This document shows, piece by piece, positions 1 through 49,501 of a stretch of DNA of 64,000 nt. Under the pieces are notes generated by a model, which did not search any database, was not told the DNA's origin, and saw only the letters and a list, made by a program, of their open reading frames with translations. The position numbers were made by a program, and so were the translations under genes. The stretch lies in contig NW_005434658.1 of NCBI RefSeq assembly GCF_000315625.1, forward strand, positions 277,139 through 341,138, read 5' to 3'. How positions within the stretch are numbered: the stretch's first letter is position 1; each line of letters starts with the position of its first letter. Source of the stretch: Guillardia theta CCMP2712. Taxonomy: Eukaryota > Protista > Cryptophyta.

Positions 1-616
1 GCAAGGATGCGCCGGGCAGCGCCAGCATGAGCGTGTCCAGCCACCTGCACGCGCTCTGCATCGCAGCTGCCTCGTCGCTCGTGCTGTCCGTCACGTAGAC
101 GGGCAGGAGGCGGTCGGACATCAGGAGCGAGTGTCCCACCAGGTAGCAGGCCTGACCTGCCAGGTCCCAAAACTGCAGCGACACGTTGGTGGTGGAGGAG
201 GAGGAGGAGGAGGACGATGGAGGAACGAGGAGACATAAGGAGGGAAGAGGGAGGAAGATAGCAGGAAGGAAGTTGGAGGGGGAGGAAGGGAGGGACAGAC
301 GGACGCACGGACGGACGAGGGACGAGGGACGAGGGAAGGAGGGAGGGAGCAAGAGGAGGCAGGAGAGAAGGAAGGACGGAACGTGCCTGGTGATATTCTT
401 GTCATCTGATATTTCTTGAGGTGTGTCGGTAGGTCGTCGTCTTGCTTGGCTGCAGAAAATCTCGAAGAGCTCCTGATGATCGAGAGACTGTCAGTGAACA
501 AGGTCCAGGGTGAGGAGGAGGAGGAGGAGGAGGTTGGGGAAAGAAAGTGGGAGGTACTGCTGCTGCTGCCGCAGCAGCAGCAGCGCTGAGAAGCACGGGG
601 TCGGGAATAGCTGGAA

Positions 617-27610: not shown

Positions 27611-28530
27611 CTAACCAATCTGAGCCCGCATGGAGGATGAGAGATTTTGAGTGAATCGTAGTAGTTTCAGAGTGTTGCGGACTGGTATGACGACATGTTC
27701 GCAAGATATCACACAGTGTGTGCTTGAGGCAAACCGGGGGTTGAAGCTTAAATCCACTAACGCCAGTCTCTCTTGTGCAAGTCCATCTTCCCAGACAGCA
27801 GCCACTTTGGCTTCCAGTTGTGGATGGTACGGTCCCCCTCTCCCATCTGTGAGTAGAACCTGGAGTTCCTGAAGGAATAGACGAAAGACCTGGGGCAATC
27901 TCGTTCAGCGAGGCTACCAAGTCAGCCACCTCCGAGTACCTGTCCTTCAACCTCTGCGCAGCAGCTCGTTTCTGGATGCTCTTGAACCCATCGGGGGCGA
28001 TTCCAGTGTACAGGAGACTGGCTACCCCCTCTCTCACCCCCAGCCTGTTCCTCATTGACCAGGTAGCCGTGTAACCAGCAGTGCTGTAGGGAAGGGTGAG
28101 GAAGAAGTATGAGAAGCGCTCGGAAGCAAACCTGTGAGCCTTGATGCCCTTTCCCAACCTGTCGGGATCATGCCTGTGCTCAAATACTTCAGTTTCAGGC
28201 CAGGATTGCTCGAAGTTTAGGCGTGCTTCCTACTTCAGGATCGATCTGTCTTTCCAGTCTTCCATGGCCCCTCCAAATGGGGCACGATAACTTTTCTCCT
28301 GAAGCTCAACCCAATGCTAATATGCGAGTTAATGGAAGCAGACGAGTTGTGGAAAGGCGAAATTCCAGATTTCTACCTTGAGTAGGGATCCTCTCCTTTC
28401 TTTCTCCTAGAGATGAAAAGCAGTCAGCTGTGAAGAGAAATCTTCCTCCATCAACAACCTCCGCTATCGTCCTTCTCGTCTGCTTGAGATATTCAAGCCC
28501 TCCGATTCTTTCTCCTGCAGACAGAAAGTA
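27611..28530 (-). CDS. Possible hypothetical multi-exon gene, or further 3' exons of the eL22-like gene
   Basis: Minus-strand open segments with splice-like signals; no recognised domain. Confidence 0.3.
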
Positions 28531-28602
28531 TGGTCAAGTCATGCATTTCACACTCCCACCTATCCACCAGTTGCTTTTATCTTTCGCTCCATGTACATTT
28601 CT

Positions 28603-29776
28603 TTACGCGGAACCTGCCCATCCATCATACACAGCAATAGATCGATATCTTCCTGGTCACGTGTAGTTTGTCGGCATCATTCACTGCATACGCGCTGGCG
28701 ATGAGGTTTTTCCTAGCCATCTCCAATCTGGTTCCGTGCTGTGTCGAGGAAGTCAGTTGGTTACAGCAGTGGTCCCTGCAGTCTGAAACTTGACCACCTT
28801 AGCTATGTACTTGATCTTGTGATATTTGTTCTTGTGAATGTTTGTATATCGAATCTCGAATCTAACGCCCTTCCCTCCTTTCTCTTGACTGCAGGGATTG
28901 TCAAGTCTCAGTCATCGTGATTTCAAGACTGCGGATCGTTCACCTCGCCTTGGAGAAGTCCACTGATACTGGCCGCACGATATCTTTCAGCTCTATCTTG
29001 CAAATGAATTTTTTCGTCAGATATCTGATGTATCTCGTCGAGAATGCTTCGGACAGGAACAACTGATTCTCATTTTAGTCTTTCAACGCAAATCATCAGC
29101 CTCCACGACAAACCTTTCGAGACCAAACTCGCTTCTTCTTCATCTGGGTAGGTTTGTATGCAAGGACAATGACATCGTGACCATCCACCTTAACTTCAAT
29201 CGCATCATCATAGTTGTGCAGCTTCCCATTGTATTTGATCCTTTGCTTGAGATACGTTGCCAAGTCAGTGGCGTTGAACAAGCCATGTGCGATCGCAAGA
29301 GTGCAGTTCACGCTCGCTCGTTTAAGAACAGGAGCGTCAGGAGATCGCATTTTCTTCTTCAGGGATACTTGTGTACCACCCTCGGTCGTGCTCCTCCTTG
29401 CTGACTTGGGCCGCTCCTTTACGATCTTGTTGGCGTGAATGTGGTACTTCTTCAACTCTTCATAGTCATCCACCACCAGCTTGTCGTGTTTCACAGGTTT
29501 GGGTTCCCCCAGCACCAGCTGAGAAAGCCTGGATTCAAACTGCATCTTCGACTTCACCCTGTCCTCGTCCTCCTCGTGGTCAAGCTCCATAGCTGCGGTC
29601 TGCTTCCCAAACTGCTGCTTGAAGCTCTGGCTTTGCCCTCCTCTCAGCCGCAGCAAAAAGTTCAACCGGGAGCGGGGCCCTCGGTCACTTGCGATGCCAC
29701 TCGCCGTGTGTGTCGTTGAGAGCAGAGGCGCGAGGAGGAACAGGAGGAACGGTCGGAACTGGCTTAGCGGGGCCAT
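28603..29776 (-). CDS. Divergent ribosomal protein eL22-like with an N-terminal signal peptide and LRLRGG motif; 3' end uncertain
   Basis: VNCTLAIAHGLFNATDLATYLKQRIKYNGK...FSTRYIRYLTKKFICKIELKDIVRPV...FEIRY matches eL22 motifs (ERIKVNGK, FSKRYLKYLTKKYL, YELRY). Leader is MAPLSQFRPFLLFLLAPLLSTTHTA...LLRLRGG. Confidence 0.8.
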
Positions 29777-30050
29777 TGTTGGATGACCTGTGTTCGTCGC
29801 TGATGGGACGAGGTGTCTGTATCCTTCACCCAAGGACTCAGATCTCTGAGCTCTCAGTTGCACCCTCTCTTCACCATCCTCCTCTCCTCCCTGCTCCTCG
29901 CGCACGAACGGCTCCTGTGCATGGTTACCTTAGCGGAGCTACCCCACCCCACCTCACTCTACCACCCATACCCCCATTTTTCCTTTCGAAAGACCCCTTG
30001 TGGAAGATATACACCCCACCACCACCATACCTAAGATGATAGGTCTCCTC

Positions 30051-31476
<1,426 letters not shown>

Positions 31477-46791: not shown

Positions 46792-48626
46792 TCCTCCTCC
46801 TCCTCCTATCCCCCGCTCTTTTCTCTAGTCCCTCCCCCCTCCTCACCAGGTAAATGTCAAACATAGCCTTGCAAAGAGGAGCTGACGAAAATGTTTTCTT
46901 CTGTCCAAGAGCTGAAACCTGCACCAACCCATCTCAGCTTCACCGCCCTCTACCACCCCCTGCTTTTCCTCTCCCACGGACCCCTCTTCCTTCCTCCATT
47001 TGCCAACCTGGAGGTCACTTCCCATCTGGATGAAGTCGATCTCATTGTTCGTCTCCAACTTGCTCATCGAGCCGAAGAAGCTGCGAGGACTCTTGAGAAC
47101 GGAGCAGAGGAAGCATGAACAAACACCCTGCAAGAGGGAAGCGGAAGAGGAAAAGGAAGACATGGAAATAGAGGAGGAGGAGGAGGAGGAGGAGGAGGAG
47201 GAGGAGGAGGAGGAGGAGGAGGAGGAGGAGGAGGAGGAGGAGGAGGAGGAGGAGGAGGAGGAGAAGGTACGCATGTGCAGCACGGAAGAAGGAGAGGCGA
47301 CTTTGATGTTTCACCTCTTGAACGCATCCAACGGCGCATCTGTCCCCTTGACCCTGCGGTGAGTTCAGAGCCCAGGCGACTCCCACCAGCCTCCCAGCTC
47401 GCAGCTACCTGGGCTCAAGAGACTCCGCAAGCGCATTTCCGATCTTCTCAGCTCCAACTAGTGGAGAAGGTAAGGAGGAGAAGGGGAGCGAGGGAGGGGA
47501 GAGGGGAGAGGGGGACAAGAAGAAGGATTCCAATGACTCGACAGCAAGTACACGTGTAACGAGCAAAGACATGAGGGCGCCTAGCAGAAACGAAGAGGAG
47601 GAGGAGGAGAAGGTGGTGGCAGCGGTGGCGGTGGAGGACTGGCAGAGGAGGCAAGGAGAGAGGAGGGAGGAGGGAGGAGGGAGGAGGGAGGAGGGAGGAG
47701 GGACTGGTTGGAACCGGTTCGAGCCATGACGATCTTGAGCGCTTTAGGGTACGAGCCCTCTAGGAGGGCCTTATTCGCAGACTTCTCGTCCTTGGGAGCC
47801 GCCGCCTGAAGCACTGAGTCAACAGACGCAGACTCGTCTCTCCCTGTCCTACTCATAGACTGCTCTGAACCTCCTGTCCCTCCTTTTCCAACCCTCCACT
47901 TCCCCATTCCCCCCCTTCAACAACCTCCCTTCTCGTTCTATTTGCTGTGCTCTCCTCTCTTCTTCTCCTCTCCTCTCCTCTCCTCTCCTCTCCTCTCCTC
48001 TCCTCTCCTCTCCTCTCCTCTCTCCACCTTTGCAGCGTCGGAGTCAACGTACATCCCCACCGCGTACACATTCACAGCAACGGGCCCCAGGATAGCCTTC
48101 TTCCTCTCGCCAGCTCCAATGAACTGCAAGCAAAGTGAGATGAGCATGCCGGACCAGCAAGAGCAAGCAGAACCTTTAGGAGCTTTGAACCTGCCTTGAC
48201 GGTCTCCGGGAAAGTGATTCCTGTCCGAACGATCGTTAGAATCAAAAGCGAAGGACATGTATGCATTGGGTACACGCTCACTGGAAAACCGCCAGCCTCT
48301 ACAGGAAGCAGCGCAGAGTATAGCAGGGAGGGGAGAGGGTGGGAAGAAGAGGAAATCATAATCATGATAATAGACAGGACTCTCCATAAGATCATCTTGT
48401 TCACATCCATGAAAATGTTGCGATCTTGTACTCTACCTGTGTGTTTCTCAACAAATCCCGATCCTCCTCGTAGGCGGTTCGCCAGCGCACCGCCCTGCTG
48501 AGCCTGCGCGACCAGGAGGGGGGAGGAACGTGCATAGGGGCTGAGGGACGAGGATGCAGGGAGAGAGAGGCCGCCTTCTCCTCTGCATGCCGCCAGTGCC
48601 GCCACGATAGTTAGCGCCTTCAGCAT
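46560..48626 (-). CDS. Chalcone-isomerase-fold (FAP/CHI-like) protein with a signal peptide and RLRGG motif, multi-exon
   Basis: VEKHTG|ITFPE, FIGAGERKKAILGPVAVNVYAVGMYVD, LCKAMFDIYL|GESPVS. Leader is MLKALTIVAALAACRG...ANRLRGG. Confidence 0.85.
47171..47263. repeat. (GAG)n microsatellite, intronic
   Basis: About 30 perfect GAG units. Confidence 0.97.
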
Positions 48627-49501
48627 TGTTGTATCGAAATCTGGATCCTTTGTGGAGTGGCAGAGCAAAACCGATATTTGGATCTTATCTCAAATATATG
48701 TAAATTTTGACCAAATTTATTTTGAAAATATAATATATTATGAGAAATAATTTCAAACTCAAAGTTCCAAGACCCTCAGTGATAATCCTATGAAACACAC
48801 ATAAACAGGGTGGTCTCAGTTGTGACTAAATCGATTCAAATCTGATACAGGTCAATTTGAATCAATTCAGTCCATTCCGTCCGATCTCCCCCACCTGGGG
48901 AAATTCAGCACGACTCACAAATATGAGAGAATTTGAGAAAAATGTTGAAATTCTTTTCAACAATTTCAACATTTTTATTTTACAGGAACATGATTTCATT
49001 CACCCTACCCCTCAGATCTGGAATTTTCTCCCTACACAGCTCCCTACACCTCATCCACAATGGCAGGATACTGCTTGAGAGTGGGTTCATGGCTTCGCTT
49101 GTCCGATAGCGGCCATGCTGTTCCTACCTGCCATGGCTTCCTTCTCCGATCATACTACGTCGCCCCACCACCGTTTGTTGCCTCCCACCCCCTTGATTCC
49201 CTTGTTGCTACGTCCTGTTTTCCAACGATTCACATCCCCCAACCACCTCCCCTGCCACCTTGCAGCCCACTGATCTCCCGCCTCGTCCTCATGCTGTTCT
49301 TGTCTCTCATGCCGCATGCTGCCGTATGCCAATCTAGTCATTGAAACCCCCTCTACATTTCGGAGATTTCGAATGCAAATGAGTTTACACGAGATAGGGT
49401 CGGAATGAGTATGGACACGCTTGTACAACAGCAAAGTTTTTGAGAGCATAGCTTGTATTTTACATGCATTGTAATCTCATTTCCAGGACCACCTCCAAGA
49501 C

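What the first reader, a model, noticed from the sequence alone, without database searches (positions are those of the whole stretch)
28603..29776. Cytosolic-type ribosomal protein eL22 with a secretory leader: candidate nucleus-encoded subunit of the nucleomorph (periplastid) ribosome
Seen: a strongly diverged eL22 core preceded by a hydrophobic leader, LRLRGG and a charged extension of about 100 aa. Established: eL22 is eukaryote-specific and has no role in the ER lumen or plastid stroma; cryptophyte periplastid compartments contain 80S ribosomes. Inference: the protein is imported to complete the symbiont-derived ribosome, by endosymbiotic gene transfer or as a retargeted host duplicate.
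Basis: partly seen in the sequence, partly recalled or inferred. Interest (0 to 1): 0.7.

Follow-up and report, generated by a model that had tools for sequence, protein, structure and literature searches.

The report
Periplastid-targeted long eL22-like protein
This Guillardia theta nuclear gene makes a 494-residue protein built around a ribosomal eL22 fold; its import leader ends in ubiquitin's last residues, which probably sends it to the relict endosymbiont cytoplasm, but a second, compact eL22 with the same kind of leader is the likelier missing ribosome subunit.

Summary
The minus strand carries an ATG at 29776, a hydrophobic leader, LRLRGG, a charged stretch of about 100 aa and a diverged eL22 core. 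Spliced transcript contigs from three studies, plus orthologs, give 11 exons, CDS 29776-27757 and 494 aa, with a conserved C-terminal extension of about 200 aa that has no known relative. The public model (EKX50090.1, 101 aa, "cytoplasmic type") is truncated.

Periplastid targeting is well supported:
- Transcripts include the leader.
- A leaderless cytosolic eL22 exists elsewhere in the genome.
- Published tables list no nucleomorph rpl22.
- The same "signal peptide ... RLRGG" leader sits on the nucleomorph-localised histone H2A, on eS7 and eL38 paralogs and on starch enzymes. It is absent from 24 LHC loci.

Other agents of this scan noted the leader class before on other DNA of this genome.

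The claim that this is the missing eL22 subunit is weakened. A compact eL22 with an LRGG leader lies on another contig. Both the short and the long family are conserved in other cryptophyte-like sequences. I read this gene as a periplastid eL22-fold RNA-binding protein, possibly ribosome-associated, and probably not the canonical subunit.

The parts
29777..29938 (-). 5' UTR; transcript contigs end at 29938, 29912 and 29905
   Evidence: table 8
29854..29922 (-). Out-of-frame upstream ORF of 22 codons in the 5' UTR (uATGs at 29922 and 29877)
29696..29776 (-). Signal-peptide-like leader, aa 1-27 (R8, h-region aa 10-20, small residues A-S-G at its end)
   Evidence: read from the sequence, no SignalP run
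29636..29695 (-). Pro-region aa 28-47 ending in LRLRGG (aa 42-47, nt 29653-29636), a mimic of the ubiquitin C-terminal tail; presumed processing site
29342..29635 (-). Charged region aa 48-145 with the conserved blocks T-M-E-L-D-acidic...VK and H-x-H-A-N-K-I-V; no confident fold
29114..29341 (-). eL22 domain, first part (rest of exon 1; Pfam match aa 153-214)
28944..29062 (-). Exon 2: eL22 RNA-binding helix FSTRYIRYLTKKF, after an 18-aa family-specific insertion that spans the exon 1/2 junction
28798..28888 (-). Exon 3: last eL22 strand (RFEIRYTN), after an 11-aa insertion
28661..28738 (-). Exon 4: start of the conserved C-terminal extension (HGTRLE.AR)
28568..28613 (-).
28459..28514 (-). Exon 6
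28377..28406 (-). Exon 7
28234..28316 (-). Exon 8 (HWVELQ..YRAPFGGAM)
28132..28173 (-). Exon 9; the upstream junction comes from the contigs' loose end, the downstream donor is inferred
27940..28083 (-). Exon 10; both flanking introns (28131-28084 and 27939-27890) are inferred from GT-AG ends and ortholog collinearity
27757..27889 (-). Exon 11, coding part, ending ...KPKWLLSGKMDLHKRDWR plus TAG (27759-27757)

Best explanation
The gene encodes a long-form eL22-fold protein that is imported into the periplastid compartment (PPC), the relict cytoplasm of the red-algal endosymbiont. Proposed route: the signal peptide takes the precursor into the ER lumen around the plastid. The short pro-region carries it across the periplastid membrane. 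The leader is then removed at the ubiquitin-tail mimic LRLRGG, leaving a 447-aa, strongly basic protein (net charge +42). Its eL22 fold keeps the RNA-binding helix. The mature protein probably binds nucleomorph-derived RNA as a ribosome-associated, ribosome-biogenesis or other RNA-binding factor. The compact paralog on contig C13 more likely fills the canonical eL22 site of the PPC ribosome. Shown here: gene structure, transcription including the leader, the eL22 fold, family conservation, and the link between this leader class and PPC proteins. Inferred: localisation of this protein, cleavage after GG, RNA binding, and the division of labour with the C13 copy.
For: Gene and transcript: seven GT-AG junctions are identical in contigs from three studies, and the 5' ends lie upstream of the ATG. 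The 494-aa model is 58% identical and collinear with P0082.

eL22 core: Pfam hits on the exons; orthologs score 55-67 bits; PDB eL22 chains match at E 5e-12. The ortholog model matches eL22 chains at Z 14.2, rmsd 1.9 A over 94 aa, and the top 13 matches are all eL22.

Leader: all 9 family members with a complete N-terminus have a hydrophobic h-region followed by h-h-(R/H)-L-(R/K)-G-G, while the spacer varies from 10 to 100 aa.

Leader class and the PPC:
- The same leader precedes the extended H2A locus on contig C4, which I take to be GuiTh_1001763, the H2A that PMC5443833 localises to the nucleomorph.
- It precedes eS7 and eL38 paralogs, two proteins also absent from the nucleomorph, directly at their mature N-termini.
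- In an unselected sample, 6 of 18 RLRGG sites follow a signal-peptide-like start, against a 2.1% base rate (P = 1.3e-6).
- Two of those six are a starch phosphorylase and a CBM20 protein. Cryptophyte starch lies in the PPC (my own knowledge).
- None of 24 LHC loci has the leader.

Against a role as the canonical subunit: the compact C13 eL22 with an LRPLRGG leader has leader-bearing orthologs. The long and short families are each monophyletic (100/100 and 100/99) and are not shown to be sisters. The long family has two conserved insertions and a 200-aa extension found only fused to the eL22 domain.
Against: No localisation data exist for this protein, and no signal-peptide predictor was run. 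Cleavage after GG is untested. In Toxoplasma PUBL an RGG that precedes a ubiquitin domain is not processed (PMC5487736). Deubiquitinases normally need the folded ubiquitin body. Nothing excludes that the long form occupies the eL22 site: it keeps the rRNA-binding helix, is very basic like a ribosomal protein, and is well represented in transcript assemblies. The taxonomy of most orthologs is unknown; only Hanusia phi is named.
Confidence: 0.5

Rival explanations
1. One reading: this is the nucleus-encoded eL22 subunit of the PPC (nucleomorph-served) 80S ribosome. Its extensions would be ribosomal-protein expansions, and the C13 copy would serve another purpose or alternate with it.
For: The nucleomorph lacks rpl22. 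The eL22 fold and the FSTRY..YLTKKF helix are conserved. The PPC-type leader is present. The mature protein has net charge +42. The family is old and conserved. A separate cytosolic eL22 exists.
Against: A compact, leader-bearing eL22 family that resembles canonical eL22 more closely in size, and somewhat more in sequence, co-exists and is conserved. The ribosome has one eL22 site. The long family sits on a very long stem (1.95 changes per site) with two core insertions and a 200-aa extension of unknown fold.
Confidence: 0.3
2. The leader sends the protein into the ordinary secretory pathway or ER, not the PPC, and the eL22 fold does something unrelated to ribosomes there.
For: Only the N-terminal hydrophobic segment is directly visible. 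Mammalian eL22 was also described as a heparin-binding protein (molecule name).
Against: The leader class is shared with the locus taken to be the nucleomorph-localised H2A, with ribosomal-protein paralogs and with PPC starch enzymes. A very basic RNA-binding fold has no obvious role in the ER lumen.
Confidence: 0.07
3. Public annotation: a short cytosolic eL22 paralog (L22e_2, 101 aa) translated from the internal Met; the leader would be untranslated.
For: GenBank model EKX50090.1.
Against: That model's intron 1 contradicts the junction 29114/29062 seen in three studies. The ORF is open from ATG 29776 to 27757. The leader, charged region and C-terminal extension are conserved at protein level in at least ten orthologs.
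Confidence: 0.03
4. Origin hypothesis, compatible with the readings above: the leader tail and the stretch after GG descend from a polyubiquitin junction, so the gene began as a ubiquitin-fusion-like construct.
For: phmmer matched aa 35-83 to repeated polyubiquitin junctions. Aa 28-47 against the ubiquitin tail beat all 2000 shuffles. Aa 48-135 aligns collinearly with ubiquitin residues 2-68, and only 7 of 2000 shuffles reach that score.
Against: Orthologs show no significant post-GG similarity. Pfam PF00240 gives no hit. AlphaFold shows no beta-grasp fold there, with pLDDT under 50.
Confidence: 0.15

Closest known systems
Eukaryotic ribosomal protein eL22 (RPL22; Pfam PF01776)
   Same: Same fold (Z 14.2, rmsd 1.9 A over 94 aa), 28-40% identity in the core, and a conserved RNA-binding helix.
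   Different: 494 aa instead of about 120. It has an import leader, a 100-aa charged N-terminal region, two core insertions (18 and 11 aa) and a 200-aa C-terminal extension with no relatives.
Compact leader-bearing eL22 of G. theta (contig C13, locus L004)
   Same: Nuclear gene, signal peptide, leader ending in LRGG, eL22 core; also conserved in other cryptophyte-like sequences.
   Different: About 190-aa precursor in my approximate model, with no core insertions and no C-terminal domain. It is only 22-31% identical to the long family and is not shown to be its sister.
[quoted passage not shown] 2017, PMC5443833)
   Same: The H2A locus with an N-terminal extension (contig C4) starts with a signal peptide and a spacer ending in LSLRLRGG; the paper reports nucleomorph localisation.
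   Different: Unrelated mature protein. The paper describes a bipartite signal but not the RLRGG ending. That the C4 locus is the paper's gene is my inference.
Ubiquitin-ribosomal protein fusions eL40 and eS31
   Same: A ribosomal-type protein made behind ...LRLRGG and presumably released by cleavage after GG. rpL40 and rpS27A are nucleomorph-encoded.
   Different: Only the 6-12 residue tail of ubiquitin is present here, not the folded domain. The eL22 core lies 100 aa downstream of GG.
Paralog pairs RpL22 / RpL22-like (Drosophila) and RPL22 / RPL22L1 (vertebrates)
   Same: Two eL22 paralogs in one translation system, with extra-ribosomal RNA-hairpin binding known for this fold. Drosophila eL22 also carries a long extension (PDB 4v6w chain of 299 aa).
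   Different: Those pairs are close in sequence and cytosolic. Here the two are deeply diverged and both appear to be exported to a second eukaryotic cytoplasm.

Membership tests
eL22 (PF01776) | Profile match above Pfam's gathering score | tested here: met
   30.6 bits (exon 1) and 24.1 bits (exon 2) against a cut-off of 23.6; full-length orthologs score 55-67 bits.
eL22 (PF01776) | eL22 three-dimensional fold | tested here: met
   Tested on the ortholog P0071:130-487, not on the spliced G. theta model. VIA Z 14.2, rmsd 1.9 A, 94 of 97 residues; the top 13 matches are all eL22. Foldseek agrees.
eL22 (PF01776) | Conserved RNA-binding helix F-S-K-R-Y-L-K-Y-L-T-K-K | tested here: met
   FSTRYIRYLTKKF in G. 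theta; several positions are invariant across 15 family members.
eL22 (PF01776) | Small single-domain protein of about 100-140 aa | tested here: not met
   494-aa precursor, 447 aa after the presumed cut, two core insertions, 200-aa extension.
eL22 (PF01776) | Stoichiometric component of the 60S subunit | not testable with these tools
   Needs PPC ribosome purification with mass spectrometry or cryo-EM.
Cryptophyte periplastid (PPC) pre-proteins | N-terminal signal peptide | tested here: inconclusive
   Hydrophobic h-region (KD 2.53) after R8, with small residues at its end. No dedicated predictor was available.
Cryptophyte periplastid (PPC) pre-proteins | No aromatic residue at +1 of the transit-peptide-like part (rule as quoted in PMC5443833) | tested here: inconclusive
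   The likely cleavage sites (after THT or after ASG) give A or I at +1, but the site was not predicted by a tool.
Cryptophyte periplastid (PPC) pre-proteins | Leader ending in (L)RLRGG, the class signature seen in this scan | tested here: met
   LRLRGG at aa 42-47, kept in 9 of 9 N-complete orthologs. The class is linked to the nucleomorph H2A locus, eS7, eL38 and starch enzymes, and is absent from LHC loci.
Cryptophyte periplastid (PPC) pre-proteins | Experimental localisation in the PPC or nucleomorph | not testable with these tools
   No data for this protein.
Ubiquitin-fusion ribosomal proteins | Complete ubiquitin domain upstream of GG | tested here: not met
   No PF00240 hit. Only the 12-residue tail aligns with ubiquitin.

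The most novel reading that the evidence does not exclude
Cryptophytes maintain two deeply diverged, nucleus-encoded eL22 proteins for the endosymbiont-derived translation system. The long form, with a C-terminal domain not found outside this family in my searches, would either define a structurally distinct PPC ribosome population or be a previously unknown nucleomorph RNA-binding factor built on a ribosomal-protein fold. It would mature by a cut after a ubiquitin-tail mimic.
Probability: 0.3. Interest if true: 0.75.

Novelty: new variant of a known kind. Interest (0 to 1): 0.6.

Why it matters
How the nucleomorph-served 80S ribosome gets the subunits its own genome has lost is still largely a prediction. 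This locus gives a corrected 494-aa gene model for a protein now annotated as a 101-aa cytosolic eL22. It shows that two conserved eL22 lineages carry periplastid-type leaders, so the question of which one sits in the PPC ribosome can be tested directly. It adds a strongly conserved example, 9 of 9 orthologs, of the ubiquitin-tail leader ending. That ending offers a simple sequence rule for predicting the PPC proteome and points to a protease activity worth looking for.

Tried and rejected
- My first C13 model spliced exon 1 at 963. The ortholog L083 shows exon 1 runs on to ...NEWSGRNIG and that a further small exon exists. The C13 model is therefore approximate upstream of the core.
- A ubiquitin-like domain after GG is not supported.
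- The C-terminal extension gave nothing in Pfam, NCBIfam, a PDB profile search, the ESM Atlas or the word search. Structural aligners matched only the eL22 core. The first AlphaFold run was poor (pLDDT 52). The second resolved only the core and two or three helices.
- Raw RNA run X19 laid no reads, so it is no test.
- A word search with the C13 ORF found one near-identical fragment only, so I could not build a red-algal versus host phylogeny. The small tree has three canonical sequences and cannot give an origin.
- The genome-wide nucleotide pattern for RLRGG shows no enrichment by itself (2240 hits against 2653 for the control). The signal appears only at protein level.
- eL37 showed one nuclear locus, uS13 one strong and one weak, and the two uL29 loci had no RLRGG nearby.
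- The joined spliced model was never sent to a search or fold tool. Searches used single exons by reference or database orthologs. The joined sequence was used only inside local scripts.

Full report
**What is at the locus.** The window belongs to the Guillardia theta nuclear genome: contig C16 of an 87-Mb assembly, and the annotated product carries G. theta accessions. On the minus strand an ORF starts at ATG 29776. In-frame stops lie upstream and no earlier in-frame ATG exists. It reads a hydrophobic N-terminus (h-region FLLFLLAPLLS, aa 10-20), then a short Ser/Arg-rich spacer, then LRLRGG at aa 42-47. A charged stretch follows, and then a sequence that Pfam recognises as Ribosomal_L22e on two separate exons.

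**Gene model.** Contigs from three independent studies lie on the stretch as one spliced molecule of about 1.8 kb. They share seven identical GT-AG junctions on the minus strand, and their 5' ends at 29905-29938 lie upstream of the leader. The runs are only guessed to be RNA, but intron-less contigs can only come from spliced RNA. The raw-read RNA run X19 laid nothing and is no test.

The contigs continue 450-484 nt beyond 28233. Two more short GT-AG introns (28131-28084 and 27939-27890) are inferred from full-length orthologs. With them the ORF ends at TAG 27759-27757, which is 319 nt of coding sequence plus a 131-165-nt 3' UTR and so matches the contig lengths.

The result is 11 exons and 494 aa, collinear and 58% identical to ortholog P0082. 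The public model EKX50090.1/XP_005837070.1 ("L22e_2, cytoplasmic type", 101 aa) starts at an internal Met. It uses an intron 1 that the transcripts contradict, and it stops in intron 2. I did not send the joined model to any search or fold tool. Searches used exons by reference or database orthologs.

**The protein family.** An exhaustive HMMER search with exon 1, and a word search with an ortholog's C-terminal part, found at least ten distinct relatives of 414-578 aa. One is from Hanusia phi. The others come from environmental or transcriptome assemblies without names. All share the same layout:
- a leader;
- an acidic/basic region with the blocks T-M-E-L-D...VK and H-x-H-A-N-K-I-V;
- an eL22 core with two family-specific insertions (18 aa before the FSTRY helix, 11 aa before the last strand);
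- a C-terminal extension of about 200 aa ending in KPKW(L/M)(L/F/M)SGK(M)(D/N)LHKRDWR.

The core folds as eL22. The AlphaFold model of P0071:130-487 has pLDDT 79-90 in the core and matches eL22 chains at Z 14.2, rmsd 1.9 A over 94 residues. The top 13 matches are all eL22 (Foldseek; sequence level).

The extension is predicted as a few helices plus low-confidence segments. It has no relative in Pfam, NCBIfam, PDB or the ESM Atlas, and in the word search it occurs only fused to the eL22 domain. The mature protein would be very basic, with net charge +42.

**Is it sent to the periplastid compartment?** All nine family members with a complete N-terminus have a hydrophobic start followed by h-h-(R/H)-L-(R/K)-G-G. 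The spacer between them varies from 10 to 100 aa and is not conserved. That pattern is what a short functional motif looks like.

The same leader type recurs in G. theta exactly where PPC import is expected:
- The H2A locus with an N-terminal extension on contig C4 begins with a signal peptide and ends its leader with LSLRLRGG. Three canonical H2A copies have no leader. I take this locus to be GuiTh_1001763, the H2A that Onuma et al. report in the nucleomorph (PMC5443833).
- eS7 and eL38, like eL22, are absent from the nucleomorph gene list (Maier et al. 2013, Table S2, PMC3879969). Each has a second nuclear copy whose leader ends in MRLRGG or LRLRGG right where the mature protein begins.
- In an unselected sample of 18 in-frame RLRGG sites, six follow a signal-peptide-like start within the same ORF. 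The base rate is 2.1% (P = 1.3e-6).
- Two of those six are a starch phosphorylase and a CBM20 starch-binding protein. Cryptophyte starch is made in the PPC (my own knowledge).
- None of 24 LHC loci, whose products go on into the plastid, carries the motif.

I found no open-access paper that pairs "LRGG" with cryptophyte or nucleomorph terms. Subscription papers were not searched.

Other agents of this scan had already noted the leader class at other places in this genome. I treated those notes as leads and rely only on the tests above. How the motif works is inference. It most plausibly marks where the leader is cut, perhaps by a ubiquitin-tail-specific protease. rpL40 and rpS27A, which are ubiquitin fusions in most eukaryotes, are nucleomorph-encoded. 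If they are still fusions there, which I did not check, the PPC already needs such an activity. A caution: in Toxoplasma PUBL an RGG before a ubiquitin domain is not processed (PMC5487736).

But the third locus, on contig C13, encodes a compact eL22 with a signal peptide, a Ser-rich spacer and LRPLRGG. Another first-stage note had flagged it.

A metagenome scan found C13 orthologs, including a spliced transcript, with leaders ending in LQLRGG, LRLRGG or HRLRGG. Both a short and a long leader-bearing eL22 lineage are therefore conserved. In a small tree each is monophyletic (100/99 and 100/100), the long one on a stem of 1.95 changes per site, and no sister relationship is shown. Core identities are 35-42% for short against canonical, 28-40% for long against canonical, and 22-31% for short against long.

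The ribosome has one eL22 site, and the short form looks like an ordinary eL22. I therefore consider it the likelier PPC ribosomal subunit. I read the long form as a distinct PPC protein that uses the eL22 fold, known elsewhere to bind RNA hairpins outside the ribosome, for a ribosome-associated or other RNA-binding task. This is a judgement, not a demonstration.

**Ubiquitin ancestry.** The HMMER search also returned many polyubiquitins that match aa 35-83. The tail match is clear: aa 28-47 against STLHLVLRLRGG beat all 2000 shuffles. The stretch after GG aligns collinearly with ubiquitin residues 2-68 in G. theta (7 of 2000 shuffles reach the score). That similarity is not significant in orthologs, gets no Pfam hit and shows no beta-grasp fold in the model. 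A descent of the leader from a polyubiquitin junction stays a weak possibility.

**Limits.** Missing are: localisation data, a signal-peptide predictor, expression data for the C13 copy, a red-algal versus host phylogeny, and taxon names for most orthologs. The last two introns are inferred, not seen in reads. The C13 model is approximate upstream of its core.

Noticed in passing
window 48462-48668 (-): A second gene in the window starts with a signal-peptide-like MLKALTIVAALAAC..., and its spacer ends in ANRLRGG (the motif starts at 48476). The downstream exon gave no Pfam hit, so the protein is unknown.
   Followed up: partly
L004 (G000 C13:978264-979244), + strand: Compact eL22 paralog with a signal peptide, a Ser-rich spacer and LRPLRGG. 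Orthologs in environmental contigs L083, L085/L090 and L086-L089 keep an LRGG leader. It is the likelier periplastid ribosomal eL22.
   Followed up: yes
L009 (G000 C99, - strand) and L016 (G000 C15, + strand): eS7 and eL38 paralogs whose leaders end in MRLRGG and LRLRGG directly before the normal N-terminus of the ribosomal protein. Both proteins are absent from the nucleomorph gene list.
   Followed up: partly
L057 around 415-600 (+) (G000 C4): The H2A locus with an N-terminal extension, which I take to be the nucleomorph-targeted H2A, has a leader ending in LSLRLRGG. An LHC gene lies tail-to-tail nearby on the other strand.
   Followed up: partly
L047 and L052 (G000 C1 and C2): A starch phosphorylase and a CBM20 starch-binding protein carry the same signal peptide plus RLRGG leader, which fits periplastid starch metabolism. 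L048 is a CCHC zinc-knuckle protein with the same leader.
   Followed up: partly
window 29854-29922 (-): A 22-codon out-of-frame upstream ORF lies in the 5' UTR of the gene. The longest contig holds it whole; the two shorter ones keep only its second ATG.
   Followed up: no
window 30067-30483 (-): An Asp/Glu-rich low-complexity ORF lies just upstream on the same strand. A separate short contig touches 30031-30060, so it is probably another transcript.
   Followed up: no
protein P0081 (environmental ortholog): The gene model joins an E2 ubiquitin-conjugating-enzyme N-terminus, which has its own leader ending in PLRLRGG, to the long eL22 protein, which has a second leader end CLCLRGG. It is probably two neighbouring leader-bearing genes merged by the gene caller.
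   Followed up: no
protein P0002 (Hanusia phi transcript model): The ortholog model reads exon 2 out of frame and runs through introns 2 and 3, so it is a partly unspliced or alternatively spliced transcript. Only its first 225 or so residues are reliable.
   Followed up: partly
G000 C98:155187-155784 (+): A weak ubiquitin-like match lies directly upstream of a perfect ubiquitin unit in a 209-aa open frame. It could be a leader-bearing periplastid ubiquitin.
   Followed up: no
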